Part shown: one piece after another, positions 1-62,696 of the stretch | Layout of the letters: each line of letters opens with the position of its first letter | Position numbering within the stretch: the first letter of the stretch is position 1 | Source: Dendrobates tinctorius | Lineage: Eukaryota | DNA length: 64,000 nucleotides | Reading direction: 5' to 3' | NCBI RefSeq assembly: GCF_039654945.1 | Contig: NW_027361897.1 | Coordinates: forward strand, 9,982,001 to 10,046,000 | The notes under the pieces: generated by a model | What the model saw: only the letters and a program-made list of their open reading frames with translations | Told to the model about the DNA's origin: nothing | Database searches by the model: none | Position numbers and translations under genes: made by a program

Positions 1-302
1 AACATCTTCGTTATGTCCACAGTTATGTACTGTAAATGGTTGGTGTAGGCAGTCCCATACGCGTTGTTCATTGCCAGTGCATTGCACATCATCCAATACA
101 ATTACTCCTTGTCCTTGGCCAAATGCAGCACTGCCATTAAATGCAAGAGCTTGGCCACAATTTAACTGCCGGCATACAACTTGTGCAGCATTCAGATCAA
201 AATAATCATCACACACAGTTCCCCATGCTCCATTATAGAGGATTTCTACACGACCGTTACATTGACCATTGCCATTTACCAGTCGTAAAGACAAGTCTGA
301 AC
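1..302 (-). CDS. SRCR exon E1 (partial, 3' end outside window)
   Basis: Near-identical to the other SRCR exons; acceptor TTTTTAG ends at 303. Confidence 0.88.
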
Positions 303-937
303 CTAAAAATAAGGAGAATGGTCATTTCTAAAAACATTTTATTGTAAATTATCTTAAAAGGGAACCAGACAGGTCCCCTCTGTCTTCCCAACCACCAGCA
401 TTTATATTATTGTTACTAAATACCCTGCCTATTCAGCATTTTTTAGTGTTTAACAACTAAATACAGATTTTAAAATTTTTTTTATAAATACTGATGAGCG
501 GACATTTTCAGAAAACGTTCAACAATCTCAAATTTGGCATGAATGCAGCTCATTGGGATTTGTGTACAGATTTTCGAGCATTTTCCCTTAAACCCGGCAA
601 AATTCCGGGAACAGTTCAGTAATTGAAAGGGATTTCACTAATGCTTTGTCAGGACTTTGTCTTGAAGAGTGGTAATGAATTTTGAGTGTGGGGTCTTTAA
701 TGAGGGGATTTAATGGGGAGAGGTCAGAGGAGCGACGGCCTGTTTTTCTTTCTTTTTTAATTTTTTTTCTTCTTTATATTAACTTAATGTATGCAGATTC
801 AGGCAGCCAATTACAGCACAAATACCATCCACAATGACCAGACATAAGTGCTTCTGCTATTGGCTGCCAAAATCACATGTCCCTCTACATATAAAAAGCG
901 AGTATGTTATTTGGGTGTCGTGATTTTGTCAGTGTAA

Positions 938-1321
938 AGGTACTGTCACGCTTAGCGATGCACCAGCGATCCCGACCAGTGATATGACGGGGTCAGGATC
1001 GCTGTTGCATCGCTAAGTGGTCGCTAGTGAGCTGCCACACAGGCAGATCTCACCAGCGAGATCGATGGGGTCGGGGGTCGCTACTTACCTGTCAGACGAG
1101 GCGATGAAGACGTCCTCCTGCCCGCATCCACGCGTCGCTCGTCTCTCCACAGGAAGCGCCGCAGGAAGCTGACGACGAGAAACAGTCCTGGACGTTCTCA
1201 CGCGATCAGCGATAACCAGCGGGGGAGCGGGTCTTAGGTAAGTATCAGACATAGCAATATCGCTATAACGTCACAAGTTATAGCTATATTGCTAGTGATA
1301 TCGCTAAGTATGACAGTACCT
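938..1321. mobile_element. 384-bp MITE, PIF/Harbinger-like (copy 1)
   Basis: 22-bp TIRs AGGTACTGTCACGCTTAGCGAT / ATCGCTAAGTATGACAGTACCT (2 mismatches); flanks TAA...TAG versus empty site GTGTAACAG in B introns, consistent with a 3-bp TWA-type TSD with one mismatch. Confidence 0.85.
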
Positions 1322-1444
1322 TAGCAGTAGAGAGGCTGCTTCTATGGCTGTTGCAAGTTGTCAGATAGTTAGAAATGCAGTTTATTGTCAGCTACTTCAG
1401 TCATATAGGATCCTGTGTAAAATCAACCTTCCATCATCTAAAAT

Positions 1445-2065
1445 GATTGTGCTAATAGTTTGGTGCAGGCAGGAGGCCACATTTCCTTATCACAATAACT
1501 TGGATTAATATTGTGGTGCAGGAAGGAGGCTACATTTCCTAATGAAAATCGTTTGGACTAACATTGTGGTGCAGGCAGGTGGCCATATTTCCTAATTAAA
1601 ATTGTTTGGCCAAATATTGTGGTGCAGGCAGAAGGCCACATTTCCCAATCATGATGTTTTGGGCTAATATTGTGGTGCCAGCAATAGTCCATGTTTCCTA
1701 ATCAAACTTGTATGGGCTGAAATTTTGTGGTTCAAAAAGGAGACCACATTTCTTTATCTAAATTATTTGTGCTAATATGGTTTTACAGGCAGTTTGTCAT
1801 ATTTCATAATCTAAATCCTTTCAGCTAATAGTGTGGTCCAGACAACAGCCTACATTTTTTAATCTCAATCATTTCTTACAAAAGTTTGGTCCATACACTA
1901 AATCTTCTATTTTATTATTGCAGTGCACGCAGGAGGCAGAAGGCCACATTTCCTAATTTAAATCGTTTGTGCTAATATTCTGGTGCAGGCAGGAGGCCAC
2001 ATTTCCTAATCTAAATTGTGCTAAAATTCTAATGCAGGCAGGAGGACACATGACCTAATCTAATA
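1445..2065. repeat. Degenerate 53-bp minisatellite, type A version (present in every intron)
   Basis: TGTGGTGC recurs with its C at 1519, 1572, 1625, 1678; consensus TTGTGCTAATATTGTGGTGCAGGCAGGAGGCCACATTTCCTAATCTAAATCGT. Confidence 0.88.
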
Positions 2066-2402: not shown

Positions 2403-2720
2403 CTGAGCAGACAACTCCAACATCTTCATTATGTCCACAGTTATGTACTGTAAATGGTTGGTGTAGGCAGTCCCATACGCGTTGTTCATTGCCGGTGCAT
2501 TGCACATCATCCAATACAATTACTCCTTGTCCTTGGCCAAATGCAGCACTGCCATTAAATGCAAGAGCTTGGCCACAATTTAACTGCCGGCATACAACTT
2601 GTGCAGCATTCAGATCAAAATAATCATCACACACAGTTCCCCATGCTCCATTATAGAGGATTTCTACACGACCGTTACATTGACCATTGCCATTTACCAG
2701 TCGTAAAGACAAGTCTGAAC
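2403..2720 (-). CDS. SRCR exon E2 (318 nt, phase 1-1)
   Basis: 8-Cys SRCR; acceptor TTATTTTTAG|GTTCAG, donor CAG|GTATAT. Confidence 0.92.
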
Positions 2721-3743: not shown

Positions 3744-4826
3744 TAGCAGTAGAGAGGTTGCTTCTATGGCTGTTGCAAGTTGTCAGATAGTTAGAAATGC
3801 AGTTTATTGTCAGCTACTTCAGTTATATAGGATCCTGTGTAAAATCAACCTTCCATCATCTAAAATAATTGTGCTAATAGTTTGGTGCAGGCAGGAGGCC
3901 ACATTTCCTTATCACAATAACTTGGATTAATATTGTGGTGCAGGAAGGAGGCTACATTTCCTAATGAAAATCGTTTGGACTAACATTGTGGTGCAGGCAG
4001 GTGGCCATATTTCTTAATTAAAATTATTTGGTCAAATATTGTGGTGCAGGCAGAAGGCCACATTTCCCAATCATGATGTTTTGGGCTAATATTGTGGTGC
4101 CAGCAATAGTCCATGTTTCCTAATCAAACTTGTATGGGCTGAAATTTTGTGGTTCAAAAAGGAGACCACATTTCTTTATCTAAATTATTTGTGCTAATAT
4201 GGTTTTACAGGCAGTTTGTCATATTTCATAATCTAAATTCTTTCAGCTAATAGTGTGGTCCAGACAACAGCCTACATTTTTTAATCTCAATCATTTCTTA
4301 CAAAAGTTTGGTCCATACACACTAAATCTTCTATTTTATTATTGCAGTGCACGCAGGAGGCAGAAGGCCACATTTCCTAATCTAAATCGTTTGTGCTAAT
4401 ATTCTGGTGCAGGCAGGAGGCCACATTTCCTTATCTAAATTGTGCTAAAATTCTAATGCAGGCAGGAGGACACATGTCCTAATCTAATATTAGCTGAATA
4501 TTGGTTATTAATAGTCAAACATAACATTTATAATTATTATGTGGAATAAAACACTGTAACAGAAACCCATCAGCATCTCATTATTGTGGTTTCAATACAA
4601 CTCACAAAGGCATCCTACTACCACATAAAACCCCTTAACATTTTGGATTTAATGGAGAAGGAACCAAAGTACCTCCAGTCCATTAAGATTTTCTTAAAAC
4701 ATAAAATATTTATTGTTTGAGTTACCCTTAGTTGTAGAAAATATGAAAATGTGGATTAATTTAACATCTATGCAAACAAAATGATGTGAGATCAATGAAT
4801 AAGATTTCATCATTTTGAAAATATAC

Positions 4827-5153
4827 CTGAGCAGACAACTCCAACATCTTCATTATGTCCACAGTTATGTACTGTAAATGGTTGGTGTAGGCAGTCCCAT
4901 ACGCGTTGTTCATTGCCGGTGCATTGCACATCATCCAATACAATTACTCCTTGTCCTTGGCCAAATGCAGCACTGCCATTAAATGCAAGAGCTTGGCCAC
5001 AATTTAACTGCCGGCATACAACTTGTGCAGCATTCAGATCAAAATAATCATCACACACAGTTCCCCATGCTCCATTATAGAGGATTTCTACACGACCATT
5101 ACATTGACCATTGCCATTTACCAGTCTTAAAGACAAGTCTGAACCTAGAGAAC
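4827..5153 (-). CDS. SRCR exon E3 (327 nt; alternative acceptor at 5144)
   Basis: 8-Cys SRCR; acceptor T8AG|GTTCTCTAG|GTTCAG. Confidence 0.9.
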
Positions 5154-6965: not shown

Positions 6966-7283
6966 CTGAGCAGACAACTCCAACATCTTCATTATGTCCA
7001 CAGTTATGTACTGTAAATGGTTGGTGTAGGCAGTCCCATACGCGTTGTTCATTGCCGGTGCATTGCACGTCATCCAATACAATTACTCCTTGTCCTTGGC
7101 CAAATGCAGCACTGCCATTAAATGCAATAGCTTGGCCACAATTTAACTGCCGGCATACAACTTGTGCAGCATTCAGATCAAAATAATCATCACACACAGT
7201 TCCCCATGCTCCATTATAGAGGACTTCTACACGACCGTTACATTGACCATTGCCATTTACCAGTCGTAAAGACAAGTCTGAAC
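6966..7283 (-). CDS. SRCR exon E4 (VEVL/GQAIA variant)
   Basis: 8-Cys SRCR, canonical splice sites. Confidence 0.92.
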
Positions 7284-7920: not shown

Positions 7921-8316
7921 AGGTACTGTCACGCTTAGCGATGCACCAGCTATCTCGACCAGCGATATGACGGGGTCAGGATCGCTGGTGCAACGCTAAG
8001 TGATCGCTAGTGAGCTGCCACACAGGCAGATCTTACCAGCGAGATCGATGGGGTCGGGGGTCGCTACTTACCTGTCAGACGAGGCGATGAAGACGTCCTC
8101 CTGCCCGCGTCCACGCGTCGCTCGTCTCTCCACAGGAAGCGCCGCAGGAAGCTGACGACGAGAAACAGTCCTGGACGTTCTCACGCGATCAGCGATAACC
8201 ATCGGGGGAGCGGGTCGTAGGTACGTATCAGACATAGCAATATCGCTAGCAATATCGCTATAACGTCACAAGTTATAGCTATATTGCTAGTGATATCGCT
8301 AAGTATGACAGTACCT
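7921..8316. mobile_element. MITE copy 3 (12-bp internal duplication)
   Basis: Same TIRs; AGCAATATCGCT doubled. Confidence 0.85.
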
Positions 8317-9399
8317 TAGCAGTAGAGAGGCTGCTTCTATGGCTGTTGCAAGTTGTCAGATAGTTAGAAATGCAGTTTATTATCAGCTACTTCAGTTATA
8401 TAGGATCCTGTGTAAAATCAACCTTCCATCATCTAAAATGATTGTGCTAACAGTTTGGTGCAGGCAGGAGGCCACATTTCCTTATCACAATAACTTGGAT
8501 TAATATTGTGGTGCAAGAAGGAGGCTACATTTACTAATGAAAATCGTTTGTACTAACATTGTGGTGCAGGCAGGTGGCCATATTTCCTAATTAAAATTGT
8601 TTGGTCAAATATTGTGGTGCAGGCAGAAGGCCACATTTCCCAATCATGATGTTTTGGGCTAATATTGTGGTGCCAGCAATAGTCCATGTTTCCTAATCAA
8701 AATTGTATGGGCTGAAATTTTGTGGTTCAAAAAGAAGACCACATTTCTTTATCTAAATTATTTGTGCTAATATGGTTTTACAGGCAGTTTGTCATATTTC
8801 ATAATCTAAATCCTTTCAGCTAATAGTGTGGTCCAGACAACAGCCTACATTTTTTAATTTCAATCATTTCTTACAAAAGTTTGGTCCATACACACTAAAT
8901 CTTCTATTTTATTATTGCAGTGCACACAGGAGGCAGAAGGCCACATTTCCTAATCTAAATCGTTTGTGCTAATATTCTGGTGCAGGCAGGAGGCCACATT
9001 TCCTAATGTAAATTGTGCTAAAATTCTAATGCAGGCAGGAGGACACATGTCCTAATCTAATATTAGCTGAATATTGGTTATTAATAGTCAAGCATAACAT
9101 TTATAATTATTATGTGGAATAAAACACTTTAACAGAAACCCATCAGCATCTCATTATTGTGGTTTCAATACAACTCACAAAGGCATCCTACTACCACTTA
9201 AAACCCCTTAACATTTTGGATTTAATGGAGAAGGAACCAAAGTACCTCCAGTCCATTCAGATTTTCTTAAAACATTAAATATTTATTGTTTGAGTTACAC
9301 TTAGTTGTAGAAAATATGAAAATGTGGATTAATTTAACATCTATGCAAACAAAATGATGTGAGATCAATGAATAAGATTTCATCATTTTGAAAATATAC

Positions 9400-9726
9400 C
9401 TGAGCAGACAACTCCAACATCTTCATTATGTCCACAGTTATGTACTGTAAATGGTTGGTGTAGGCAGTCCCATACGCGTTGTTCATTGCCGGTGCATTGC
9501 ACATCATCCAATACAATTACTCCTTGTCCTTGGCCAAATGCAGCACTGCCATTAAATGCAAGAGCTTGGCCACAATTTAACTGCCGGCATACAACTTGTG
9601 CAGCATTCAGATCAAAATAATCATCACACACAGTTCCCCATGCTCCATTATAGAGGATTTCTACACGACCATTACATTGACCATTGCCATTTACCAGTCT
9701 TAAAGACAAGCCTGAACCTAGAGAAC
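9400..9726 (-). CDS. SRCR exon E5 (327 nt; linker D->G)
   Basis: 8-Cys SRCR, tandem acceptors. Confidence 0.9.
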
Positions 9727-11539
9727 CTAAAAAAAAGGAGAATGGTCATTTCTAAAAACATTTTATTGTAAATTATCTTAAAAAGAACCAGAAAGGTCCT
9801 CTACGTGATCACAACCACCAGCATTTGTGTTATTGTTACTAAATACCCTGCTTTTTCATCCCTTTATTGTGTAAACACCTAAATGCAGATTAAAAAAAAA
9901 ATATTATAAATAGTGATGAGTGGACTTTTTTGGAAAACGTTCAACAATCTCAAATTTGGCCGGAAAGCAGCTCATTTGTATTTGTGTTTAGATTTATGAG
10001 CATTTTCCCTTAAAACTTGCAATATTCCGGGAACCGTTCAGTAAATGACCGTGATTCCGCTAATGCTTTGTTACGACTTTTTCTTGGATAGCGGTGCTGA
10101 ATTTTGAGTGGGGGGTCTTTAATGAGGGGATTTAATGGGGAGAGGTCAGAGAAGCAACTGACTGTTTTTCATTTTTTTCTTTTTCAAATTTTTTTCTTCT
10201 TTATAATAACTTACAATGTGTAGATTCTGGCAGCCAATCACAGCACAAATACCATCCACAATGTCCAGACACAAGTGCTTCTGCAATTGGCTGCCAAAAT
10301 CACATGTCCCTCTCCTTATAAAAAGTGAAGATGTTGTTGGGGGTGTCCCGATTTTGTCAGTGTAACAGAAGTGAGAGGCTTCTTCTATGGCTGTTGCAAG
10401 TTGTCAGATAGTTAGAAATGCAGCTTATTGTCAGCTACTTAAGTTGTATAGAATCCTGTGTAAAATCAACCTTCCGTTATCTAAAATGATTGTGCTAATA
10501 GTTAGGAGGCCACATTTCCTAATTACAATAATTTGGATTAATATTGTCGTCCAGGAAGGAGGCTACATTTCCTAATGAACATCGTTTGGACTAACATTGT
10601 GGTGCAGGCAGGATGCCATAATTCCTAATAAAAATTCTTTGGGCTAATATTGTGGTGCAGGCAGAAGACCACATTTCCCAGTCATGATGTTCTGGGCTAA
10701 TATTGTGGTGCCAGCAAGACTCCATGTTTCCTAATCAAACTTGCTTCGGCTAAAAATTTTTGGTTTGAAAAGGAGGCCTCATTTCTTTATCTAAACTATT
10801 TGTGCTAATATGGTGTTACAGGCAGGTCTTCATATTTCAGAATCAAAATCCTTTCAGCTAATAGTGTGGTCCTGACACCAGCCTGCACTTTTTAATCTCA
10901 ATCCTTTTTGACAATAGTTTAGTTCATACACACTAAATCTTCTGTTCTATTATTGAAGTGCACGCAGGAGGCAGGAGACCATATTTTCTAATCTAAATTG
11001 TTTGTGCTACTATTGTGGTGCAGGCAGGAGGCCACATTTCCTAATCTAAATCGTTTGTGCTAATATTCTGGTGCAGGCATAATGCCACATTTCCTATTCT
11101 AAATCATTTGTGCCAATATTCTGGTGCAGTCAGGAGGCCATATTTCCTAATCTAAATTGTGCTAAAATTCTCATGCAGGCAGGAGGACACATGTTCCAAT
11201 CTAATATTAGCTGAATATTGATTATTATTAGTCAAACAAAACATTAATAATTATTATGTAGATTAAAACCCTGTAACAGAAACCCATCAACATCTCATTA
11301 TTGTGGTGTCAATACACCTGACAAAGGCATCCTATTACCATATAAAACCCCTTAACATTTTGGACTTAATGGGGAAGGAACCAAAGTACCTCCAGTCCAT
11401 TAATATTTTCTTATAAAAAAAAATATTGTTTGAGTTAACCTTAGTTGTAGAAAATATGAAAATGTGGATTAATTTAACATCTATGCAAACAAAATGATGT
11501 GAGGTCACTGAATAAGATTTCATCATTTCAAAAATATAC

Positions 11540-11857
11540 CTGAGCAGACAACTCCAACATCTTCGTTATGTCCACAGTTATGTACTGTAAATGGTTGGTG
11601 TAGGCAGTCCCATACGCGTTGTTCATTGCCAGTGCATTGCACATCATCCAATACAATTACTCCTTGTCCTTGGCCAAATGCAGCACTGCCATTAAATGCA
11701 AGAGCTTGGCCACAATTTAACTGCCGGCATACAACTTGTGCAGCATTCAGATCAAAATAATCATCACACACAGTTCCCCATGCTCCATTATAGAGGATTT
11801 CTACACGACCGTTACATTGACCATTGCCATTTACCAGTCGTAAAGACAAGTCTGAAC
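11540..11857 (-). CDS. SRCR exon E6
   Basis: 8-Cys SRCR, canonical splice sites. Confidence 0.92.
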
Positions 11858-12489
11858 CTAAAAATAAGGAGAATGGTCATTTCTAAAAACATTTTATTGT
11901 AAATTATCTTAAAAGGGAACCAGACAGGTCCCCTCTGTCTTCCCAACCACCAGCATTTATATTATTGTTACTAAATACCCTGCCTATTCAGCATTTTTTA
12001 GTGTTTAACAACTAAATACAGATTTTAAAATTTTTTTTATAAATACTGATGAGCGGACATTTTCAGAAAACGTTCAACAATCTCAAATTTGGCATGAATG
12101 CAGCTCATTGGGATTTGTGTACAGATTTTCGAGCATTTTCCCTTAAACCCGGCAAAATTCCGGGAACAGTTCAGTAATTGAAAGGGATTTCACTAATGCT
12201 TTGTCAGGACTTTGTCTTGAAGAGTGGTAATGAATTTTGAGTGTGGGGTCTTTAATGAGGGGATTTAATGGGGAGAGGTCAGAGCGACGGCCTGTTTTTC
12301 TTTCTTTTTTAATTTTTTTTCTTCTTTATATTAACTTAATGTATGCAGATTCAGGCAGCCAATTACAGCACAAATACCATCCACAATGACCAGACATAAG
12401 TGCTTCTGCTATTGGCTGCCAAAATCACATGTCCCTCTACATATAAAAAGCGAATATGTTATTTGGGTGTCGTGATTTTGTCAGTGTAA

Positions 12490-12873
12490 AGGTACTGTCA
12501 CGCTTAGCGATGCACCAGCGATCCCGACCAGTGATATGACGGGGTCAGGATCGCTGTTGCATCGCTAAGTGGTCGCTAGTGAGCTGCCACACAGGCAGAT
12601 CTCACCAGCGAGATCGATGGGGTCGGGGGTCGCTACTTACCTGTCAGACGAGGCGATGAAGACGTCCTCCTGCCCGCATCCACGCGTCGCTCGTCTCTCC
12701 ACAGGAAGCGCCGCAGGAAGCTGACGACGAGAAACAGTCCTGGACGTTCTCACGCGATCAGCGATAACCAGCGGGGGAGCGGGTCATAGGTAAGTATCAG
12801 ACATAGCAATATCGCTATAACGTCACAAGTTATAGCTATATTGCTAGTGATATCGCTAAGTATGACAGTACCT
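12490..12873. mobile_element. MITE copy 4
   Basis: Same TIRs and site. Confidence 0.85.
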
Positions 12874-13956
12874 TAGCAGTAGAGAGGCTGCTTCTATGGC
12901 TGTTGCAAGTTGTCAGATAGTTAGAAATGCAGTTTATTATCAGCTACTTCAGTTATATAGGATCCTGTGTAAAATCAACCTTCCATCATCTAAAATGATT
13001 GTGCTAACAGTTTGGTGCAGGCAGGAGGCCACATTTCCTTATCACAATAACTTGGATTAATATTGTGGTGCAAGAAGGAGGCTACATTTACTAATGAAAA
13101 TCGTTTGTACTAACATTGTGGTGCAGGCAGGTGGCCATATTTCCTAATTAAAATTGTTTGGTCAAATATTGTGGTGCAGGCAGAAGGCCACATTTCCCAA
13201 TCATGATGTTTTGGGCTAATATTGTGGTGCCAGCAATAGTCCATGTTTCCTAATCAAAATTGTATGGGCTGAAATTTTGTGGTTCAAAAAGAAGACCACA
13301 TTTCTTTATCTAAATTATTTGTGCTAATATGGTTTTACAGGCAGTTTGTCATATTTCATAATCTAAATCCTTTCAGCTAATAGTGTGGTCCAGACAACAG
13401 CCTACATTTTTTAATTTCAATCATTTCTTACAAAAGTTTGGTCCATACACACTAAATCTTCTATTTTATTATTGCAGTGCACACAGGAGGCAGAAGGCCA
13501 CATTTCCTAATCTAAATCGTTTGTGCTAATATTCTGGTGCAGGCAGGAGGCCACATTTCCTAATGTAAATTGTGCTAAAATTCTAATGCAGGCAGGAGGA
13601 CACATGTCCTAATCTAATATTAGCTGAATATTGGTTATTAATAGTCAAGCATAACATTTATAATTATTATGTGGAATAAAACACTTTAACAGAAACCCAT
13701 CAGCATCTCATTATTGTGGTTTCAATACAACTCACAAAGGCATCCTACTACCACTTAAAACCCCTTAACATTTTGGATTTAATGGAGAAGGAACCAAAGT
13801 ACCTCCAGTCCATTCAGATTTTCTTAAAACATTAAATATTTATTGTTTGAGTTACACTTAGTTGTAGAAAATATGAAAATGTGGATTAATTTAACATCTA
13901 TGCAAACAAAATGATGTGAGATCAATGAATAAGATTTCATCATTTTGAAAATATAC

Positions 13957-14283
13957 CTGAGCAGACAACTCCAACATCTTCATTATGTCCACAGTTATGT
14001 ACTGTAAATGGTTGGTGTAGGCAGTCCCATACGCGTTGTTCATTGCCGGTGCATTGCACATCATCCAATACAATTACTCCTTGTCCTTGGCCAAATGCAG
14101 CACTGCCATTAAATGCAAGAGCTTGGCCACAATTTAACTGCCGGCATACAACTTGTGCAGCATTCAGATCAAAATAATCATCACACACAGTTCCCCATGC
14201 TCCATTATAGAGGATTTCTACACGACCATTACATTGACCATTGCCATTTACCAGTCTTAAAGACAAGCCTGAACCTAGAGAAC
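13957..14283 (-). CDS. SRCR exon E7 (327 nt; linker D->G)
   Basis: 8-Cys SRCR, tandem acceptors. Confidence 0.9.
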
Positions 14284-16096
14284 CTAAAAAAAAGGAGAAT
14301 GGTCATTTCTAAAAACATTTTATTGTAAATTATCTTAAAAAGAACCAGAAAGGTCCTCTACGTGATCACAACCACCAGCATTTGTGTTATTGTTACTAAA
14401 TACCCTGCTTTTTCATCCCTTTATTGTGTAAACACCTAAATGCAGATTAAAAAAAAAATATTATAAATAGTGATGAGTGGACTTTTTTGGAAAACGTTCA
14501 ACAATCTCAAATTTGGCCGGAAAGCAGCTCATTTGTATTTGTGTTTAGATTTATGAGCATTTTCCCTTAAAACTTGCAATATTCCGGGAACCGTTCAGTA
14601 AATGACCGTGATTCCGCTAATGCTTTGTTACGACTTTTTCTTGGATAGCGGTGCTGAATTTTGAGTGGGGGGTCTTTAATGAGGGGATTTAATGGGGAGA
14701 GGTCAGAGAAGCAACTGACTGTTTTTCATTTTTTTCTTTTTCAAATTTTTTTCTTCTTTATAATAACTTACAATGTGTAGATTCTGGCAGCCAATCACAG
14801 CACAAATACCATCCACAATGTCCAGACACAAGTGCTTCTGCAATTGGCTGCCAAAATCACATGTCCCTCTCCTTATAAAAAGTGAAGATGTTGTTGGGGG
14901 TGTCCCGATTTTGTCAGTGTAACAGAAGTGAGAGGCTTCTTCTATGGCTGTTGCAAGTTGTCAGATAGTTAGAAATGCAGCTTATTGTCAGCTACTTAAG
15001 TTGTATAGAATCCTGTGTAAAATCAACCTTCCGTTATCTAAAATGATTGTGCTAATAGTTAGGAGGCCACATTTCCTAATTACAATAATTTGGATTAATA
15101 TTGTCGTCCAGGAAGGAGGCTACATTTCCTAATGAACATCGTTTGGACTAACATTGTGGTGCAGGCAGGATGCCATAATTCCTAATAAAAATTCTTTGGG
15201 CTAATATTGTGGTGCAGGCAGAAGACCACATTTCCCAGTCATGATGTTCTGGGCTAATATTGTGGTGCCAGCAAGACTCCATGTTTCCTAATCAAACTTG
15301 CTTCGGCTAAAAATTTTTGGTTTGAAAAGGAGGCCTCATTTCTTTATCTAAACTATTTGTGCTAATATGGTGTTACAGGCAGGTCTTCATATTTCAGAAT
15401 CAAAATCCTTTCAGCTAATAGTGTGGTCCTGACACCAGCCTGCACTTTTTAATCTCAATCCTTTTTGACAATAGTTTAGTTCATACACACTAAATCTTCT
15501 GTTCTATTATTGAAGTGCACGCAGGAGGCAGGAGACCATATTTTCTAATCTAAATTGTTTGTGCTACTATTGTGGTGCAGGCAGGAGGCCACATTTCCTA
15601 ATCTAAATCGTTTGTGCTAATATTCTGGTGCAGGCATAATGCCACATTTCCTATTCTAAATCATTTGTGCCAATATTCTGGTGCAGTCAGGAGGCCATAT
15701 TTCCTAATCTAAATTGTGCTAAAATTCTCATGCAGGCAGGAGGACACATGTTCCAATCTAATATTAGCTGAATATTGATTATTATTAGTCAAACAAAACA
15801 TTAATAATTATTATGTAGATTAAAACCCTGTAACAGAAACCCATCAACATCTCATTATTGTGGTGTCAATACACCTGACAAAGGCATCCTATTACCATAT
15901 AAAACCCCTTAACATTTTGGACTTAATGGGGAAGGAACCAAAGTACCTCCAGTCCATTAATATTTTCTTATAAAAAAAAATATTGTTTGAGTTAACCTTA
16001 GTTGTAGAAAATATGAAAATGTGGATTAATTTAACATCTATGCAAACAAAATGATGTGAGGTCACTGAATAAGATTTCATCATTTCAAAAATATAC

Positions 16097-16414
16097 CTGA
16101 GCAGACAACTCCAACATCTTCGTTATGTCCACAGTTATGTACTGTAAATGGTTGGTGTAGGCAGTCCCATACGCGTTGTTCATTGCCAGTGCATTGCACA
16201 TCATCCAATACAATTACTCCTTGTCCTTGGCCAAATGCAGCACTGCCATTAAATGCAAGAGCTTGGCCACAATTTAACTGCCGGCATACAACTTGTGCAG
16301 CATTCAGATCAAAATAATCATCACACACAGTTCCCCATGCTCCATTATAGAGGATTTCTACACGACCGTTACATTGACCATTGCCATTTACCAGTCGTAA
16401 AGACAAGTCTGAAC
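16097..16414 (-). CDS. SRCR exon E8
   Basis: 8-Cys SRCR, canonical splice sites. Confidence 0.92.
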
Positions 16415-17164
16415 CTAAAAATAAGGAGAATGGTCATTTCTAAAAACATTTTATTGTAAATTATCTTAAAAGGGAACCAGACAGGTCCCCTCTGTCTTCC
16501 CAACCACCAGCATTTATATTATTGTTACTAAATACCCTGCCTATTCAGCATTTTTTAGTGTTTAACAACTAAATACAGATTTTAAAATTTTTTTTATAAA
16601 TACTGATGAGCGGACATTTTCAGAAAACGTTCAACAATCTCAAATTTGGCATGAATGCAGCTCATTGGGATTTGTGTACAGATTTTCGAGCATTTTCCCT
16701 TAAACCCGGCAAAATTCCGGGAACAGTTCAGTAATTGAAAGGGATTTCACTAATGCTTTGTCAGGACTTTGTCTTGAAGAGTGGTAATGAATTTTGAGTG
16801 TGGGGTCTTTAATGAGGGGATTTAATGGGGAGAGGTCAGAGCGACGGCCTGTTTTTCTTTCTTTTTTAATTTTTTTTCTTCTTTATATTAACTTAATGTA
16901 TGCAGATTCAGGCAGCCAATTACAGCACAAATACCATCCACAATGACCAGACATAAGTGCTTCTGCTATTGGCTGCCAAAATCACATGTCCCTCTACTAG
17001 AGTTGAGCGATACCGTCCGATACTTCAAAGTATCGTATCGGATGGTATCGGCCGATCTTTAAAAAAAGTATCGGTATCGCCGATTCCGATACCGGAAGTC
17101 CCATTCAAGTCTATGGGACTTCCGGTATCGGAATAAGAAAAACCCTTTCCTGCCCTTGTACAGC

Positions 17165-17470
17165 CTCTCTGGGGTCTGTACGGGCCTTTCGGGGGGCTGT
17201 GCCGGCCTGCCAGGGGGTCTGTGCAGGCTCCGGTGGTCTGTGCCGGCCTGCCGGTGGTCTGTGCAGGCTCCGGGGGGCTGTGCCGGCCTGCCGGGGGGCT
17301 GTGCCGGCCTGCCGGGGGGCTGTGCAGGCTCCGGGGGGCTGTGCCGGCCTGCCGGGGGGCTGTGCCGGCCTGCCGGGGGGCTGTGCAGGCTCCGGGGGGC
17401 TGTGCCGGCCTGCCGGGGGGCTGTGCCGGCCTGCCGGTGGTCTGTGCAGGCTCCGGGGGTCTGTGCAGGC
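17165..17470 (+). repeat. GC-rich 20/21-bp minisatellite (left arm)
   Basis: GGGGGGCTGTGCCGGCCTGCC / GGGGGGCTGTGCAGGCTCC units. Confidence 0.9.
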
Positions 17471-17613
17471 ATCGTCCGATGGGACTACAAGTCCCATCGG
17501 GCGATGCCTGCTACCATGACAGTGATTGACACATTAGCCAATGATGGGACAGTAGTAGTCCCATCATCCGGCTAATGTGTTAAATGTAAAAAAAAAAAAA
17601 AAAAAAAAAAAAT

Positions 17614-17870
17614 TACATGCTACATACATACAACATGCATACTACATACATGCTACATTCATACTACATACTACATACATGCTACATTCATACTACATAA
17701 ATACTACATGCAACATACATACTACATATATACTACATTCATACTACATACTACATATATACTACATACATACTACATACATACTACATACATACTACAT
17801 GCATGCTACATACATACTACATGCATGCTACATACATACCACATACATACTACATACATACAATACATTC
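17614..17870 (+). repeat. Compound (CATA/CATACTA/CATGCTA) microsatellite, left arm
   Basis: Low-complexity tandem sequence following a long poly-A run. Confidence 0.9.
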
Positions 17871-18552
17871 ATACAATACATACATAGACATACAGTACAT
17901 ATAACATAGAGTAACATACTTACCAATACTTGTCACATTGTTCCCCGAAGCCATTGTCTATTCCGGGATAAATATTAACATAACAAACCACAAAAATACT
18001 CACCCACGATCCGAAGCAGTCCACGAGTGTGTCCCACGACGATCTTGGGTAGAGAACTGCAGCATCAGATGATGCTGCCGTTCTCTACGGGCTGCAGGAA
18101 TCCAATGACGGAAGGTAGGTATCCTTCCGCACTGTATTCCTCCGCCACTTAAAAAAAAAAAAGTCCCTAGTCTCACTTTATGCCATTGCTGTGTGGGAAA
18201 TTCCCACACAGCAATGGCATAAAGTGAGACTAGGGACTTTTTTTTTTTAAGTGGCGGAGGAATACAGTGCGGAAGGATACCTACCTTCCGTCATTGGATT
18301 CCTGCAGCCCGTAGAGAACGGCAGCATCATCTGATGCTGCAGTTCTCTACCCAAGATCGTCGTGGGACACACTCGTGGACTGCTTCGGATCGTGGGTGAG
18401 TATTTTTGTGGTTTGTTATGTTAATATTTATCCCGGAATAGACAATGGCTTCGGGGAACAATGTGACAAGTATTGGTAAGTATGTTACTCTATGTTATAT
18501 GTACTGTATGTCTATGTATGTATTGTATGAATGTATTGTATGTATGTAGTAT
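17848..18552. repeat. Near-perfect palindrome, ~350-bp arms, 1-nt spacer at 18200
   Basis: ...TGCCATTGCTGTGTGGGAA A TTCCCACACAGCAATGGCA...; the only arm difference seen is A12 vs T11. Confidence 0.93.
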
Positions 18553-19241: not shown

Positions 19242-19272
<31 letters not shown>

Positions 19273-19384
19273 AACACATTAGCCGGATGATGGGACTACT
19301 ACTGTCCCATCATTGGCTAATGTGTCAATCACTGTCATGGTAGCAGGCATCGCCCGATGGGACTTGTAGTCCCATCGGACGATG

Positions 19385-44458: not shown

Positions 44459-44776
44459 CTGAGCAGACAACTCCAACATCTTCATTATGTCCACAGTTAT
44501 GTACTGTAAATGGTTGGTGTAGGCAGTCCCATACGCGTTGTTCATTGCCGGTGCATTGCACGTCATCCAATACAATTACTCCTTGTCCTTGGCCAAATGC
44601 AGCACTGCCATTAAATGCAATAGCTTGGCCACAATTTAACTGCCGGCATACAACTTGTGCAGCATTCAGATCAAAATAATCATCACACACAGTTCCCCAT
44701 GCTCCATTATAGAGGACTTCTACACGACCGTTACATTGACCATTGCCATTTACCAGTCGTAAAGACAAGTCTGAAC
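44459..44776 (-). CDS. SRCR exon E19 (VEVL variant)
   Basis: 8-Cys SRCR, canonical splice sites. Confidence 0.92.
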
Positions 44777-46831: not shown

Positions 46832-47158
46832 CTGAGCAGACAACTCCAACATCTTCATTATGTCCACAGTTATGTACTGTAAATGGTTGGTGTAGGCAGT
46901 TCCATACGCGTTGTTCATTGCCGGTGCATTGCACATCATCCAATACAATTACTCCTTGTCCTTGGCCAAATGCAGCACTGCCATTAAATGCAAGAGCTTG
47001 GCCACAATTTAACTGCCGGCATACAACTTGTGCAGCATTCAGATCAAAATAATCATCACACACAGTTCCCCATGCTCCATTATAGAGGATTTCTACACGA
47101 CCGTTACATTGACCATTGCCATTTACCAGTCTTAAAGACAAGTCTGAACCTAGAGAAC
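46832..47158 (-). CDS. SRCR exon E20 (327 nt; WDC->WNC)
   Basis: 8-Cys SRCR, tandem acceptors. Confidence 0.9.
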
Positions 47159-48971: not shown

Positions 48972-49289
48972 CTGAGCAGACAACTCCAACATCTTCATTA
49001 TGTCCACAGTTATGTACTGTAAATGGTTGGTGTAGGCAGTCCCATACGCGTTGTTCATTGCCGGTGCATTGCACATCATCCAATACAATTACTCCTTGTC
49101 CTTGGCCAAATGCAGCACTGCCATTAAATGCAAGAGCTTGGCCACAATTTAACTGCTGGCATACAACTTGTGCAGCATTCAGATCAAAATAATCATCACA
49201 CACAGTTCCCCATGCTCCATTATAGAGGATTTCTACACGACCGTTACATTGACCATTGCCATTTACCAGTCGTAAAGACAAGTCTGAAC
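48972..49289 (-). CDS. SRCR exon E21 (CRQ->CQQ; donor GTGTAT)
   Basis: 8-Cys SRCR, AG/GT boundaries. Confidence 0.9.
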
Positions 49290-51396: not shown

Positions 51397-51723
51397 CTGA
51401 GCAGACAACTCCAACATCTTCATTATGTCCACAGTTATGTACTGTAAATGGTTGGTGTAGGCAGTCCCATACGCGTTGTTCATTGCCGGTGCATTGCACA
51501 TCATCCAATACAATTACTCCTTGTCCTTGGCCAAATGCAGCACTGCCATTAAATGCAAGAGCTTGGCCACAATTTAACTGCCGGCATACAACTTGTGCAG
51601 CATTCAGATCAAAATAATCATCACACACAGTTCCCCATGCTCCATTATAGAGGATTTCTACACGACCATTACATTGACCATTGCCATTTACCAGTCTTAA
51701 AGACAAGTCTGAACCTAGAGAAC
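51397..51723 (-). CDS. SRCR exon E22 (327 nt)
   Basis: 8-Cys SRCR, tandem acceptors. Confidence 0.9.
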
Positions 51724-53392: not shown

Positions 53393-53710
53393 CTGAGCAG
53401 ACAACTCCAACATCTTCATTATGTCCACAGTTATGTACTGTAAATGGTTGGTGTAGGCAGTCCCATACGCGTTGTTCATTGCCGGTGCATTGCACGTCAT
53501 CCAATACAATTACTCCTTGTCCTTGGCCAAATGCAGCACTGCCGTTAAATGCAATAGCTTGGCCACAATTTAACTGCCGGCATACAACTTGTGCAGCATT
53601 CAGATCAAAATAATCATCACACACAGTTCCCCATGCTCCATTATAGAGGACTTCTACACGACCGTTACATTGACCATTGCCATTTACCAGTCGTAAAGAC
53701 AAGTCTGAAC
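53393..53710 (-). CDS. SRCR exon E23 (VEVL variant)
   Basis: 8-Cys SRCR, canonical splice sites. Confidence 0.92.
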
Positions 53711-55814: not shown

Positions 55815-56141
55815 CTGAGCATACAACTCCAACATCTTCATTATGTCCACAGTTATGTACTGTAAATGGTTGGTGTAGGCAGTCCCATACGCGTTGTTCA
55901 TTGCCGGTGCATTGCACATCATCCAATACAATTACTCCTTGTCCTTGGCCAAATGCAGCACTGCCATTAAATGCAAGAGCTTGGCCACAATTTAACTGCC
56001 GGCATACAACTTGTGCAGCATTCAGATCAAAATAATCATCACACACAGTTCCCCATGCTCCATTATAGAGGATTTCTACACGACCATTACATTGACCATT
56101 GCCATTTACCAGTCTTAAAGACAAGTCTGAACCTAGAGAAC
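55815..56141 (-). CDS. SRCR exon E24 (327 nt)
   Basis: 8-Cys SRCR, tandem acceptors. Confidence 0.9.
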
Positions 56142-57809: not shown

Positions 57810-58127
57810 CTGAGCAGACAACTCCAACATCTTCATTATGTCCACAGTTATGTACTGTAAATGGTTGGTGTAGGCAGTCCCATACGCGTTGTTCATTGCC
57901 GGTGCATTGCACGTCATCCAATACAATTACTCCTTGTCCTTGGCCAAATGCAGCACTGCCATTAAATGCAATAGCTTGGCCACAATTTAACTGCCGGCAT
58001 ACAACTTGTGCAGCATTCAGATCAAAATAATCATCACACACAGTTCCCCATGCTCCATTATAGAGGACTTCTACACGACCGTTACATTGACCATTGCCAT
58101 TTACCAGTCGTAAAGACAAGTCTGAAC
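57810..58127 (-). CDS. SRCR exon E25 (VEVL variant)
   Basis: 8-Cys SRCR, canonical splice sites. Confidence 0.92.
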
Positions 58128-59148: not shown

Positions 59149-60231
59149 TAGCAGTAGAGAGGCTGCTTCTATGGCTGTTGCAAGTTGTCAGATAGTTAGA
59201 AATGCAGTTTATTGTCAGCTACTTCAGTCAAATTGGATCCTGTGTAAAATCAACCTTCCATCATCTAAAATGATTGTGCTAATAGTTTGGTGCAGGCAGG
59301 AGGCCACATTTCCTTATCACAATAACTTGGATTAATATTGTGGTGCAGGAAGGAGGCTACATTTCCTAATGAAAATCGTTTGGACTAACATTGTGGTGCA
59401 GGCAGGTGGCCATATTTCCTAATTAAAATTGTTTGGTCAAATATTGTGGTGCAGGCAGAAGGCCACATTTCCCAATCATGATGTTTTGGGCTAATATTGT
59501 GGTGCCAGCAATAATCCATGTTTCCTAATGAAACTTGTATGGGCTGAAATTTTGTGGTTCAAAAAGGAGACCACATTTCTTTATCTAAATTATTTGTGCT
59601 AATATGGTTTTACAGGCAGTTTGTCATATTTCATAATCTAAATCCTTTCAGCTAATAGTGTGGTCCAGACAACAGCCTACATTTTTTAATCTCAATCATT
59701 TCTTACAAAAGTTTGGTCCATACACAATAAATCTTCTATTTTATTATTGCAGTGCATGCAGGAGGCAGAAGGCCACATTTCCTAATCTAAATCGTTTGTG
59801 CTAATATTCTGGTGCAGGCAGGAGGCCACATTTCCTAACCTAAATTGTGCTAAAATTCTAATGCAGGCAGGAGGACACATGTCCTAATCTAATATTAGCT
59901 GAATATTGGTTATTAATAGTCAAACATAACATTTATAATTATTATGTGGAATAAAACACTGTAACAGAAACCCATCAGCATCTCATTATTGTGGTTTCAA
60001 TACAACTCACAAAGGCATCCTACTACCACATAAAACCCCTTAACATTTTGGATTTAATGGAGAAGGAACCAAAGTACCTCCAGTCCATTAAGATTTTCTT
60101 AAAACATAAAATATTTATTGTTTGAGTTACCCTTAGTTGTAGAAAATATGAAAATGTGGATTAATTTAACATCTATGCAAACAAAATGATGTGAGATCAA
60201 TGAATAAGATTTCATCATTTTGAAAATATAC

Positions 60232-60558
60232 CTGAGCAGACAACTCCAACATCTTCATTATGTCCACAGTTATGTACTGTAAATGGTTGGTGTAGGCAGT
60301 CCCATACGCGTTGTTCATTGCCGGTGCATTGCACATCATCCAATACAATTACTCCTTGTCCTTGGCCAAATGCAGCACTGCCATTAAATGCAAGAGCTTG
60401 GCCACAATTTAACTGCCGGCATACAACTTGTGCAGCATTCAGATCAAAATAATCATCACACACAGTTCCCCATGCTCCATTATAGAGGATTTCTACACGA
60501 CCATTACATTGACCATTGCCATTTACCAGTCTTAAAGACAAGTCTGAACCTAGAGAGC
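60232..60558 (-). CDS. SRCR exon E26 (327 nt)
   Basis: 8-Cys SRCR, tandem acceptors. Confidence 0.9.
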
Positions 60559-62369
60559 CTAAAAAAAAGGAGAATGGTCATTTCTAAAAACGTTTTATTG
60601 TAAATTATCTTAAAAAGAACCAGAAAGGTCCTCTACGTGATCACAACCACCAGCATTTGTGTTATTGTTAATAAATACCCTGCTTTTTCATCCCTTTATA
60701 GTGTAAACACCTAAATGCAGATTAAAAAAAAAAATTATAAATAGTGATGAGCGGACTTTTTTGGAAAACGTTCAACAATCTCAAATTTGGCAGGAAAGCA
60801 GCTCATTGGGATTTGTGTACAGATTTTCGAGCATTTTCCCTTAAACCCGGCAAAATTCCGGGAACAGATCAGTAATTGAAAGGGATTTCATTAATGCTTT
60901 GGTAGGACTTTGTCTTGAAGAGTGGTAATGAATTTTGAGTGGGGGGTCTTTAATGGGGGGATTTAATGGGGAGAGGTCAGAGGAGCGACGGACTGTTTAT
61001 CTTTCTTTATTTTTTAAAATTTTTTCTTCTTTATATTAACTTAATGTGTGTAGATTCAGGCAGCCCATCACAGCACAAATACCATCCACAATGTCCAGAC
61101 ACAAGTGCTTCTGCAATTGGCTGCCAAAATCACATGTCCCTCTCCTTATAAAAAGTGAAGATGTTGTTGGGGGTGTCCCGATTTTGTCAGTGTAACAGAA
61201 GTGAGAGGCTTCTTCTATGGCTGTTGCAAGTTGTCAGATAGTTAGAAATGCAGCTTATTGTCAGCTACTTAAGTTGTATAGAATCCTGTGTAAAATCAAC
61301 CGTCCGTTATCTAAAATGATTGTGCTAATAGTTAGGAGGCCACATTTCCTAATTACAATAATTTGGAATAATATTGTCGTCCAGGAAGGAGGCTACATTT
61401 CCTAATGAACATCGTTTGGACTAACATTGTGGTGCAGGCAGGATGTCATAATTCCTAATAAAAATTCTTTGGGCTAATATTGTGGAGCAGGCAGAAGACC
61501 ACATTTCCCAGTCATGATGTTCTGGGCTAATATTGTGTTGCCAGCAAGACTCCATGTTTCCGAATCAAACTTGCTTCGGCTAAAAATTTTTGGTTTGAAA
61601 AGGAGGCCTCATTTCTTTATCTAAATCATTTGTGCTAATATGGTGTTACAGGCTGGTCTTCATATTTCAGAATCTAAATCCTTTCAGCTAATAGTGTGGT
61701 CCTGACACCAGCCTGCACTTTTGAATCTCAATCCTTTTTGACAATAGTGTAGTTCATACACACTAAATCTTCTCTTCTATTATTGAAGTGCACGCAGGAG
61801 GCAGGAGACCATATTTCCTAATCTAAATTGTTTGTGCTACTATTGTGGTGCAGGCAGGAGGCCACATTTCCTAATCTAAATCGTTTGTGCTAATATTCTG
61901 GCGCAGGCATAATGCTACATTTCCTATTCTAAATCATTTGTGCCAATATTCTGGTGCAGTCAGGAGGCCATATTTCCTAATCTAAATTGTGCTAAAATTC
62001 TCATGCAGGCAGGAGGACACATGTCCCAATCTAATATTAGCTGAATATTGATTATTATTACTCAAACATAACATTAATAATTATTATGTAGATTAAAACC
62101 CTGTAACAGAAACCCTTCAGCATCTCATTATTGTTTTGTCAATACACCTGACAAAGGCATCCTATTACCATATAAAACCCCTTAACATTTTGGACTTAAT
62201 GGGGAAGGAACCAAAGTACCTCCAGTCCATTAATATTTTCTTATAAAAAAAACTATTGTTTGAGTTAACCTTAGTTGTAGAAAATATGAAAATGTGGATT
62301 AATTTAACATCTATGCAAACAAAATGATGTGAGATCACTGAATAAGATTAAATCATTTTGAAAATATAC

Positions 62370-62696
62370 CTGAGCAGACAACTCCAACATCTTCATTATG
62401 TCCACAGTTATGTACTGTAAATGGTTGGTGTAGGCAGTCCCATACGCGTTGTTCATTGCCGGTGCATTGCACATCATCCAATACAATTACTCCTTGTCCT
62501 TGGCCAAATGCAGCACTGCCATTAAATGCAAGAGCTTGGCCACAATTTAACTGCCGGCATACAACTTGTGCAGCATTCAGATCAAAATAATCATCACACA
62601 CAGTTCCCCATGCTCCATTATAGAGGATTTCTACACGACCATTACATTGACCATTGCCATTTACCAGTCTTAAAGACAAGTCTGAACCTAGAGAAC
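62370..62696 (-). CDS. SRCR exon E27 (327 nt; most 5' exon in window)
   Basis: 8-Cys SRCR, acceptor T7AG|GTTCTCTAG|GTTCAG. Confidence 0.9.

What the first reader, a model, noticed from the sequence alone, without database searches (positions are those of the whole stretch)
1..62696. Giant near-clonal poly-SRCR gene: at least 27 consecutive group B domains with no spacer exons
Seen: 27 SRCR exons, all open and all phase 1-1, differing by 0-2 aa within the domain and joined only by G-S-D or G-S-L-G-S-D, each with one N-G-S sequon. Established: human DMBT1 has about 13 tandem SRCRs separated by Ser/Thr-rich SID spacers on small exons; CD163/WC1 have short linkers but diverged domains. Inference: a new architecture (DMBT1-like homogeneity, CD163-like short linkers, at least double the domain number) giving a high-avidity, probably copy-number-variable microbe-agglutinating polymer.
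Basis: partly seen in the sequence, partly recalled or inferred. Interest (0 to 1): 0.75.

Follow-up and report, generated by a model that had tools for sequence, protein, structure and literature searches.

The report
Frog gene with 27+ cloned SRCR domains
This frog DNA holds at least 27 almost identical copies of a microbe-binding protein module in one gene, joined head to tail without spacers; similar predicted genes already exist in cod, stingray and turtle, so it is a large example of a known kind.

Summary
The minus strand carries 26 complete SRCR exons and one cut by the window start. All are open, phase 1-1, with AG/GT splice sites, 8 cysteines and one N-G-S sequon. Linkers are G-S-D or G-S-L-G-S-D (G-S-L-G-S-G in two). 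Units are 2.0-2.4 kb and 96-99% identical including introns. The array runs off both window ends.

One contig from a run guessed to be RNA joins an A-exon donor (2403) directly to a B-exon acceptor (5153). No intron holds a Ser/Thr/Pro-rich micro-exon candidate. Exons differ about 1% while flanking introns differ 5-15% between the two unit types, so the exons are constrained.

The domain is DMBT1-type and keeps the cation-site residues that carry ligand binding in human DMBT1.

The "new architecture" claim does not hold. Public predicted proteins already show near-clonal SRCR runs with short or no linkers:
- polar cod: 23 domains, 99% alike
- stingray: 20 domains, 95-97%
- loggerhead turtle: 13 domains, 97%
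- an oyster: about 40 domains

Two perfectly duplicated blocks (up to five exons) could be assembly over-expansion. The gene ends, and so secreted versus membrane-bound, remain unseen.

The parts
62370..62696 (-). SRCR exon 1 of the window (B type, 327 nt, linker G-S-L-G-S-D)
   Evidence: Pfam SRCR
60232..60558 (-). SRCR exon 2 (B type)
57810..58127 (-). SRCR exon 3 (A type, 318 nt, linker G-S-D; VEVL variant)
55815..56141 (-). SRCR exon 4 (B)
53393..53710 (-). SRCR exon 5 (A; VEVL variant)
51397..51723 (-). SRCR exon 6 (B)
48972..49289 (-). SRCR exon 7 (A; R>Q variant; donor GTGTAT)
46832..47158 (-). SRCR exon 8 (B; D>N variant)
44459..44776 (-). SRCR exon 9 (A; VEVL variant)
42320..42646 (-). 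SRCR exon 10 (B)
39896..40213 (-). SRCR exon 11 (A; T>S variant)
37478..37795 (-). SRCR exon 12 (A)
35341..35667 (-). SRCR exon 13 (B)
32917..33234 (-). SRCR exon 14 (A; T>S variant)
30499..30816 (-). SRCR exon 15 (A)
28362..28688 (-). SRCR exon 16 (B)
25928..26245 (-). SRCR exon 17 (A; VEVL variant)
23789..24115 (-). SRCR exon 18 (B)
21365..21682 (-). SRCR exon 19 (A)
16998..19842 (.). 2845-bp hAT-like non-autonomous transposon (the 'foldback') inserted in the A>A intron between exons 19 and 20. It has an 8-bp target duplication CCCTCTAC and terminal inverted repeats TAGAGTTGAGC / TAGTGTTGAGC. It is not part of the coding array, but it shows that this copy is physically distinct.
   Evidence: empty sites at 31395-31402 and the matching place in the 37796-39895 intron
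16097..16414 (-). SRCR exon 20 (A)
13957..14283 (-). SRCR exon 21 (B; linker G-S-L-G-S-G)
11540..11857 (-). SRCR exon 22 (A)
9400..9726 (-). SRCR exon 23 (B; linker G-S-L-G-S-G)
6966..7283 (-). SRCR exon 24 (A; VEVL variant)
4827..5153 (-). SRCR exon 25 (B). Its acceptor at 5153 is the one seen joined to an A-exon donor in the spliced contig.
2403..2720 (-). SRCR exon 26 (A). Its donor at 2403 is the one seen joined to a B-exon acceptor in the spliced contig.
1..302 (-). SRCR exon 27 (A type), 3' end cut by the window start
8247..16997 (.). Two copies of a 4557-bp A-B dimer, 100% identical over 4194 bp. Either a very recent duplication or possible assembly over-expansion.
28262..42758 (.). Two copies of a 6979-bp A-A-B trimer with one mismatch in 7518 bp. 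Either a very recent duplication or possible assembly over-expansion.
3862..4263 (.). Example of the 53-bp minisatellite (about 3.5-7.6 copies) present in the introns. A plausible substrate for unequal exchange (inference).

Best explanation
The window is an internal piece of one very large frog gene on the minus strand. It encodes a DMBT1-type poly-SRCR glycoprotein. Each 2.0-2.4 kb unit carries one symmetric phase 1-1 exon that encodes one complete group B SRCR domain, and exons are spliced directly to each other. The protein is therefore a string of at least 27 nearly identical domains, about 2,890 residues from this window alone, joined by 3- or 6-residue Gly/Ser linkers. The array grew by recent unequal exchange of A-B dimers (about 4.4-4.6 kb) and A-A-B trimers (about 7.0 kb). 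Because every exon is phase 1-1, any gain or loss of units keeps the reading frame. Each domain keeps the residues of the two surface cation sites and a VE(V/I)LxxxxW motif. I infer that it works like DMBT1/SALSA: many equal Ca2+-dependent sites bind polyanionic surfaces (bacteria, glycosaminoglycans, mineral) with high avidity and clump or coat them. Shown: exon structure, homogeneity, exon constraint, one direct exon-exon splice, residue conservation. Inferred: ligand binding, agglutination, secretion, copy-number variation.
For: All 27 exons are open with AG/GT sites in phase 1-1. Pfam SRCR E = 2e-33. A 357-nt contig of run X8 covers 2643-2401 and then 5151-5038. It switches exactly at the predicted donor and acceptor, and X8 has next to no depth in the introns apart from a high-copy repeat. 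No open phase-1 micro-exon candidate is Ser/Thr/Pro-rich; the highest share is 0.34. Exon p-distance between A and B types is 0.013, against 0.054-0.148 in the flanking 300-nt intron blocks. Within types it is 0.003-0.009 against 0.016-0.078. Of the 14 variable exon sites, 8 are synonymous and 6 non-synonymous. The domain scores higher against solved DMBT1 SRCR domains (146-150 bits) than against the best CD163 domain (125 bits). It aligns without gaps at 64% identity to cheetah DMBT1. D31, D32, D70, D71, N93 and E98 have exactly the spacing of D1019, D1020, D1058, D1059, N1081 and E1086, the site 2 and 3 ligands of human SRCR8, where D1019A or D1020A abolish binding (PMC7043408). The unit with the hAT insertion has a target-site duplication and paralogous empty sites, so its flanks are truly contiguous.
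Against: The ends of the gene lie outside the window. No signal peptide, CUB, ZP or transmembrane exon was seen, so 'DMBT1-like secreted agglutinin' is not established. RNA support is a single contig, from a run whose RNA nature is a guess and whose organism label (D) differs from that of the best DNA holders (A). It shows only an A-to-B junction and differs from the window at 3 of 357 letters. A small run guessed RNA under organism A's label showed nothing on the exons. Only 5 of 26 domains carry the exact VEVLxxxxW motif; 21 have VEIL. One carboxylate of the buried cation site 1 (D1026 equivalent) is Ala. Two perfectly identical blocks may be assembly over-expansion.
Confidence: 0.65

Rival explanations
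1. The copy number is inflated by the assembler: a much shorter array of near-identical units was over-expanded, so the gene has far fewer than 27 domains.
For: 8247-12440 equals 12804-16997 exactly (4194 bp). 28262-35779 matches 35241-42758 with one mismatch in 7518 bp. The contig-based runs give no usable copy number.
Against: Most units differ from each other by 1-4% in their introns. They come in several length classes (1995-2434 bp) and carry copy-specific exon variants. One unit carries a private transposon insertion with a target-site duplication. Even if both perfect blocks collapsed, at least 22 exons would remain. DNA runs of at least two organism labels hold exons and introns.
Confidence: 0.1
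2. The array belongs to a membrane-anchored group B SRCR receptor of the CD163 / WC1 / CD163L1 kind, not to a DMBT1-like mucosal protein. The short linkers are those of that family, and the C-terminus outside the window would be a transmembrane segment and a tail.
For: The linker ...[13 protein letters not shown] resembles the CD163 inter-domain junctions (...ICS..ADLSLRLVDG). Xenopus tropicalis has short-linker proteins with 19-25 SRCR domains, one with a transmembrane tail (P0127, P0337).
Against: Per-domain similarity is highest to DMBT1 domains. Receptors of that family have diverged domains in a fixed order (Xenopus P0127 mean pairwise identity 0.46), whereas here identity is about 99%. 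Near-clonal arrays in other species are named DMBT1-like, and the Caretta model P0291 (82% identical to the spacer-less turtle array P0124) lists CUB and ZP among its Pfam families.
Confidence: 0.15
3. The exons are real, but mature mRNAs include only a varying subset. Since every exon is phase 1-1, any can be skipped, so the protein has far fewer domains than the genome has exons.
For: All exons are symmetric, so skipping keeps the frame. B exons carry a second in-frame AG 9 nt inside (CTCTAG|GT). Only one junction was observed.
Against: All 27 exons keep strong, nearly identical splice sites and are under constraint. In human DMBT1, protein size follows the genomic SRCR number: 8 or 13 domains give 255 or 340 kDa (PMC5435793).
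Confidence: 0.15

Closest known systems
Human DMBT1 / SALSA / gp340 / salivary agglutinin
   Same: Tandem, highly similar group B SRCR domains, one exon each. The VEVLxxxxW-type motif and the site 2 and 3 cation ligands are conserved. DMBT1 gives the highest per-domain sequence score (146-150 bits to solved DMBT1 domains). The repeat structure is prone to copy-number change.
   Different: DMBT1 has 8-13 SRCR domains separated by SID spacers, then CUB-SRCR-CUB-ZP (PMC5435793). Here there are at least 27 domains, no spacers and about 99% identity, and the C-terminal part is unseen.
Spacer-less near-clonal 'DMBT1-like' predicted proteins of other vertebrates: Boreogadus saida P0296, Gadus morhua P0308, Hypanus sabinus P0321, Caretta caretta P0124, Conger conger P0297
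   Same: Runs of 13-23 consecutive SRCR domains with linkers of 0-8 residues and 0.89-0.99 identity between neighbours. This is the same design as here.
   Different: They are computer gene models from other lineages, 59-64% identical to the frog domain, with fewer domains in the models. None is from a frog. I found no paper that describes them.
Frog canonical DMBT1 (Discoglossus pictus KAM4636964.1, P0248)
   Same: The only frog protein identified among those I looked up by name, 62% identical per domain, with SRCR domains that are highly similar to each other.
   Different: It has 15-37-residue Asn/Ser/Thr-rich spacers between domains, followed by CUB, ZP-N and ZP-C. The gene in this window lacks such spacers, so it is probably a paralogue or a derived form.
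CD163 / WC1 / CD163L1 membrane receptors
   Same: Group B domains joined by very short linkers of the same sequence pattern.
   Different: They have 9-12 (up to about 25 in Xenopus models) diverged domains in a fixed order, plus a transmembrane anchor. Per-domain scores are lower.
Oyster poly-SRCR protein (Saccostrea echinata XP_061182410.1, P0199)
   Same: 39-40 SRCR domains in a strict two-type alternation, with 7-8-residue linkers and identical every second domain. This matches the A-B dimer pattern seen here.
   Different: It is an invertebrate protein, only 35% identical, and surely an independent expansion.

Membership tests
SRCR superfamily, group B domain | Match to the SRCR profile over its full length | tested here: met
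   PF00530 E = 2e-33, profile positions 1-100 of 100
SRCR superfamily, group B domain | Eight cysteines per domain, with the whole domain on one exon | tested here: met
   8 Cys in each of 26 cores; each domain lies within one 318/327-nt exon
DMBT1 / SALSA | Tandem array of highly similar SRCR domains | tested here: met
   27 exons with pairwise aa differences of 0-3 in 105
DMBT1 / SALSA | SRCR-interspersed domains (SIDs, Ser/Thr/Pro-rich spacers on their own small exons) | tested here: not met
   A direct exon-exon junction in a spliced contig. No Ser/Thr/Pro-rich open phase-1 micro-exon candidate in any of 25 introns. Only the A-to-B junction has RNA support.
DMBT1 / SALSA | C-terminal CUB-SRCR-CUB-ZP module and N-terminal signal peptide | not testable with these tools
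   The array runs off both ends of the window, and no tool extends the window
DMBT1 / SALSA | Bacteria-binding motif VEVLxxxxW | tested here: inconclusive
   VEVLYNGAW in 5 of 26 domains and VEILYNGAW in 21. The effect of V>I is unknown.
DMBT1 / SALSA | Surface cation sites 2 and 3 (D1019, D1020, E1086; D1020, D1058, D1059, N1081) | tested here: met
   D31, D32, D70, D71, N93 and E98 at identical spacing in an ungapped alignment. The mapping to human numbering is my inference from spacing.
CD163 / WC1-type membrane receptors | Diverged domains in a fixed order, transmembrane segment and cytoplasmic tail | tested here: not met
   The domains are near-identical. The transmembrane segment and tail are not testable because they would lie outside the window.
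Spacer-less near-clonal DMBT1-like arrays (cod, stingray, turtle models) | At least 13 consecutive SRCR domains with linkers of 10 aa or less and neighbour identity of about 0.9 or more | tested here: met
   Here: at least 27 domains, linkers of 3 or 6 aa, identity about 0.99. Comparators were measured the same way.

The most novel reading that the evidence does not exclude
The array is much longer than the window (dozens to over a hundred units), is hypervariable in copy number between individuals, and is translated in full. That would give the longest homogeneous SRCR polymer known in a vertebrate. Its exons would be kept identical, even at synonymous sites, by exon-focused gene conversion while the A and B introns drift apart. 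It would be a frog-specific mucosal or skin agglutinin distinct from canonical frog DMBT1.
Probability: 0.2. Interest if true: 0.5.

Novelty: new member of a known kind. Interest (0 to 1): 0.3.

Why it matters
Tandem SRCR arrays are a textbook case of avidity set by copy number. In people, 8 versus 13 DMBT1 domains changes bacterial binding by 30-45% (PMC5435793). A frog gene with 27 or more nearly identical domains and no spacers is an extreme and clean natural example. It could matter for amphibian mucosal or skin defence, and its hierarchical repeats are a good substrate for studying unequal exchange and exon homogenisation. The design itself recurs in cod, stingray, turtle and oyster gene models. 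The value is therefore as a well-resolved example, and as a pointer that this recurrent design is scarcely described in papers, rather than as a new kind of protein.

Tried and rejected
- **Assembly artefact as the whole explanation:** rejected. Units differ by 1-4%, come in several length classes, and one carries a private transposon with a target-site duplication.
- **Foldback at 17.0-19.9 kb as a mis-join:** rejected. It is a bounded insertion with an 8-bp duplication, and paralogous introns show the empty site.
- **Hidden SID micro-exons:** scans of all introns found only hydrophobic or odd peptides with weak sites.
- **Copy number from read depth:** not usable. All four runs are stored as contigs and the tool warns against it. 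No single-copy control lies in the window.
- **Expression under the organism label of the best DNA holders:** the one small run guessed RNA (X22) showed nothing on the exons. This is no evidence of silence.
- **Rfam scan of 1-22000:** nothing found.
- **Findings search for SRCR, scavenger, zona, CUB:** no notes.
- **Paper searches for frog or teleost poly-SRCR arrays:** nothing specific. One search was badly framed and wasted.
- **Joined multi-exon protein model:** Exons were searched singly by reference, so the word search could only see proteins of 58-184 aa. Long relatives came from the representative search and from a search seeded with a database protein.
Full report
**Observation**

A stop-to-stop scan of all six frames finds 27 open segments of 107-138 codons on the minus strand, spaced about 2.0-2.4 kb apart, all beginning ...[16 protein letters not shown] and ending ...[11 protein letters not shown]. 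Read on the minus strand, every one is preceded by a pyrimidine tract and TTTTTAG and followed by GT(A/G)TAT. The last exon base, G, and the first two bases of the next exon, GT, make a Gly codon. All exons are therefore phase 1-1 and a multiple of three in length: 318 nt (A type) or 327 nt (B type).

The junction peptides are VVCS-G-SDLSL (A) and [13 protein letters not shown] (B); two B exons read SLGSG. Each core has eight cysteines and a single N-G-S sequon. There are six distinct 105-residue cores. Fifteen of 26 are identical, each differs from the majority form by 0-2 residues, and pairs differ by 0-3. Pfam SRCR matches over its whole profile at E = 2e-33.

The first exon in window coordinates (1-302) is cut by the window start, and 62697-64000 is one more intron of the same family. 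The array therefore leaves the window at both ends and 27 is a minimum. There are no N runs.

**Anatomy of the array**

In gene order, from high to low coordinates, the exon types run B B A B A B A B A B A A B A A B A B A A B A B A B A, followed by the partial A exon.

- Units from donor to donor measure 1995-2434 bp, apart from one of 5268 bp.
- Self-comparison gives blocks of 4-14 kb at 96-99% identity at offsets of about 4.4, 4.6, 7.0 kb and multiples. The array is therefore a hierarchy of A-B dimers and A-A-B trimers copied recently.
- The introns carry 53-bp minisatellites of roughly 3.5-7.6 copies.

The 5268-bp unit holds a 2845-bp insertion at 16998-19842. It is flanked by the 8-bp direct repeat CCCTCTAC and ends in TAGAGTTGAGC / TAGTGTTGAGC inverted repeats. 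The two other A>A introns show the uninterrupted site ...ATGTCCCTCTACATATAAAA. This is a hAT-like non-autonomous transposon, not a mis-join, and it marks that unit as a physically separate copy.

Two blocks are suspiciously perfect. 8247-12440 equals 12804-16997 exactly, and 28262-35779 matches 35241-42758 with one mismatch. They are either very recent duplications or assembler over-expansion. If both collapsed, five exons would go and at least 22 would remain.

**Is it a working gene?**

Exons are far more alike than the DNA around them. The p-distance between A and B types is 0.013 in the exon core, against 0.148 and 0.054 in the 300 nt upstream and downstream and 0.11-0.12 further out. Within types it is 0.003-0.009, against 0.016-0.078.

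Of the 14 variable exon sites, 8 are synonymous and 6 are not. Given about three times as many non-synonymous sites, this means purifying selection. The A and B exons differ at only two near-fixed synonymous sites.

**RNA evidence**

The run search found DNA holders under several organism labels and only guessed-RNA runs with small shares. I laid four runs on 2300-7400.

- **X8 (guessed RNA, organism D):** it has depth on exon parts and next to none in the introns, except on a very high-copy repeat at about 3326-3838.
- **The spliced contig:** one X8 contig of 357 letters covers 5038-5151 and then 2401-2643. On the gene strand this is the 3' part of an A exon up to its donor (2403) joined directly to the first bases of a B exon (5153). 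The two letters GT fit either side.
- **What it shows:** the switch falls exactly on the predicted splice sites, so the contig comes from spliced RNA. At least the A-to-B junction has no intervening exon and uses the upstream B acceptor, giving G-S-L-G-S-D.
- **Differences from the window:** the contig differs at 3 of 357 letters. One of these is a variant seen in other copies in the window. It therefore comes from another copy, another individual or a very close relative.
- **X22 (small, guessed RNA, same label as the best DNA holders):** it showed nothing on the exons, which proves nothing.
- **The two DNA runs:** both hold introns and exons. All data are contigs, so depth gives no copy number and I draw none.

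A scan of all 25 complete introns looked for open, phase-1-compatible segments of 27-180 nt with an AG, a pyrimidine tract and a GT donor. It found only weak candidates that encode hydrophobic or odd peptides. The highest Ser/Thr/Pro share was 0.34, and nothing resembles a SID.

**What the domain is like**

- Against solved structures, single DMBT1 SRCR domains score 146-150 bits, and the best single CD163 domain scores 125 bits.
- Among long database proteins, the best per-domain scores are to mammalian DMBT1 at 140-144 bits.
- The alignment to cheetah DMBT1 is ungapped at 64% identity.

In human SRCR8, site 2 is formed by D1019, D1020 and E1086, and site 3 by D1020, D1058, D1059 and N1081. 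D1019A or D1020A abolish binding to hydroxyapatite, heparin and a streptococcal protein, and binding needs Ca2+ (PMC7043408). The frog domain has D31, D32, D70, D71, N93 and E98 at exactly those spacings, a mapping I made by counting. Of the buried site 1 carboxylates, the D1023 equivalent is kept (D35) and the D1026 equivalent is Ala (A38).

The bacteria-binding motif VEVLxxxxW (Bikker et al. 2004, cited in PMC5435793) is exact in 5 of 26 domains and reads VEILYNGAW in the rest. The inference is a DMBT1-like, Ca2+-dependent, multivalent binder of polyanionic surfaces. No binding has been tested.

**Comparison with what is public**

Other agents' notes call this genome a frog. I did not verify that myself, and the best single-domain hits are only 60-65% identical across birds, fish, frogs and mammals.

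A search of 1.84 billion representative proteins with one domain ranks proteins by summed domain score. It turns up many poly-SRCR proteins: 20 domains in 2101 aa in Amia calva, 21 in another 'DMBT1-like' model, 20 in Xenopus tropicalis, 26 in Patella, and 40 in the oyster Saccostrea echinata. A second search seeded with the turtle protein added long DMBT1-like models.

I counted near-full domains, linker lengths and neighbour identity the same way for all of them:

| Species (protein) | Consecutive domains | Linkers | Neighbour identity |
|---|---|---|---|
| Boreogadus saida (P0296) | 23 | about 8 residues | 0.99 |
| Gadus morhua (P0308) | 19 | about 8 residues | 0.99 |
| Hypanus sabinus (P0321) | 20 | almost none | 0.95-0.97 |
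| Conger conger (P0297) | 22 | about 1 residue | about 0.9 |
| Caretta caretta (P0124) | 13 | two residues (G-P) | 0.97 (mean pairwise) |
| Saccostrea echinata (P0199) | 39 | 7-8 residues | 1.0 to every second domain, two types alternating |

The second search could only see proteins up to about 3150 aa, so longer models may exist. The combination of DMBT1-like homogeneity with very short linkers is thus not new. It recurs in several lineages, although I found no paper that describes it.

By contrast, the canonical DMBT1 model of the frog Discoglossus pictus (P0248) has spacers of 15-37 residues rich in Asn, Ser and Thr, followed by CUB, ZP-N and ZP-C. The gene in this window is therefore probably a spacer-less paralogue or derived form, not the canonical frog DMBT1. 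This cannot be settled without its ends.

**Verdict**

Its reading as a high-avidity SRCR polymer is reasonable and partly supported by exon constraint, one direct splice and conserved ligand-site residues. The claim of a new architecture is not supported.

Still untested:
- copy number in the individual
- variation between individuals
- the gene's termini
- the tissue of expression
- any binding activity

I class it as a new member of a known kind, of moderate to low interest. It is a very clean example for studying repeat dynamics.

**Limits and rules**

- I did not build or search a joined multi-exon protein. Exons were handled singly by reference.

Noticed in passing
window 16998-19842: The 'foldback' noted earlier is a bounded 2845-bp insertion with an 8-bp target-site duplication (CCCTCTAC), 11-bp imperfect terminal inverted repeats (TAGAGTTGAGC) and GTATCGG-type subterminal repeats. 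This points to a hAT-like non-autonomous DNA transposon. Its inside is made of inverted 21-bp GC-rich and 11-bp TACATACTACA tandem repeats. Paralogous introns show the empty site.
   Followed up: partly
window about 3326-3838 (and the matching place in other B>A and A>A introns): This interspersed repeat has enormous word depth in every run laid (summed depth over a million in the DNA runs, thousands in the guessed-RNA runs). It is probably one of the most abundant repeat families of this genome. It has no Rfam match.
   Followed up: no
window, the introns, e.g. 1452-1841, 3862-4263, 6395-6630: A 53-bp minisatellite (consensus begins CTAATATTGTGGTGCAGGCAGGAGGCCACATTTCC) is present at roughly 3.5-7.6 copies in the introns of the array, in both intron types. 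It may promote unequal exchange.
   Followed up: no
window 5145-5153 and every B-type exon start: B exons have two in-frame acceptors 9 nt apart (TTTTTTTTAG|GTTCTCTAG|GTTCAG). Use of the inner one would turn a B linker (G-S-L-G-S-D) into an A linker (G-S-D). The one spliced contig seen uses the outer one.
   Followed up: partly
P0124 (Caretta caretta CAM2117731.1): This turtle gene model starts with ZP-N/ZP-C and a furin-like site, and then runs into 13 near-clonal SRCR domains. It looks like two neighbouring genes fused by the predictor: the tail of one DMBT1-like gene and the head of the next.
   Followed up: no
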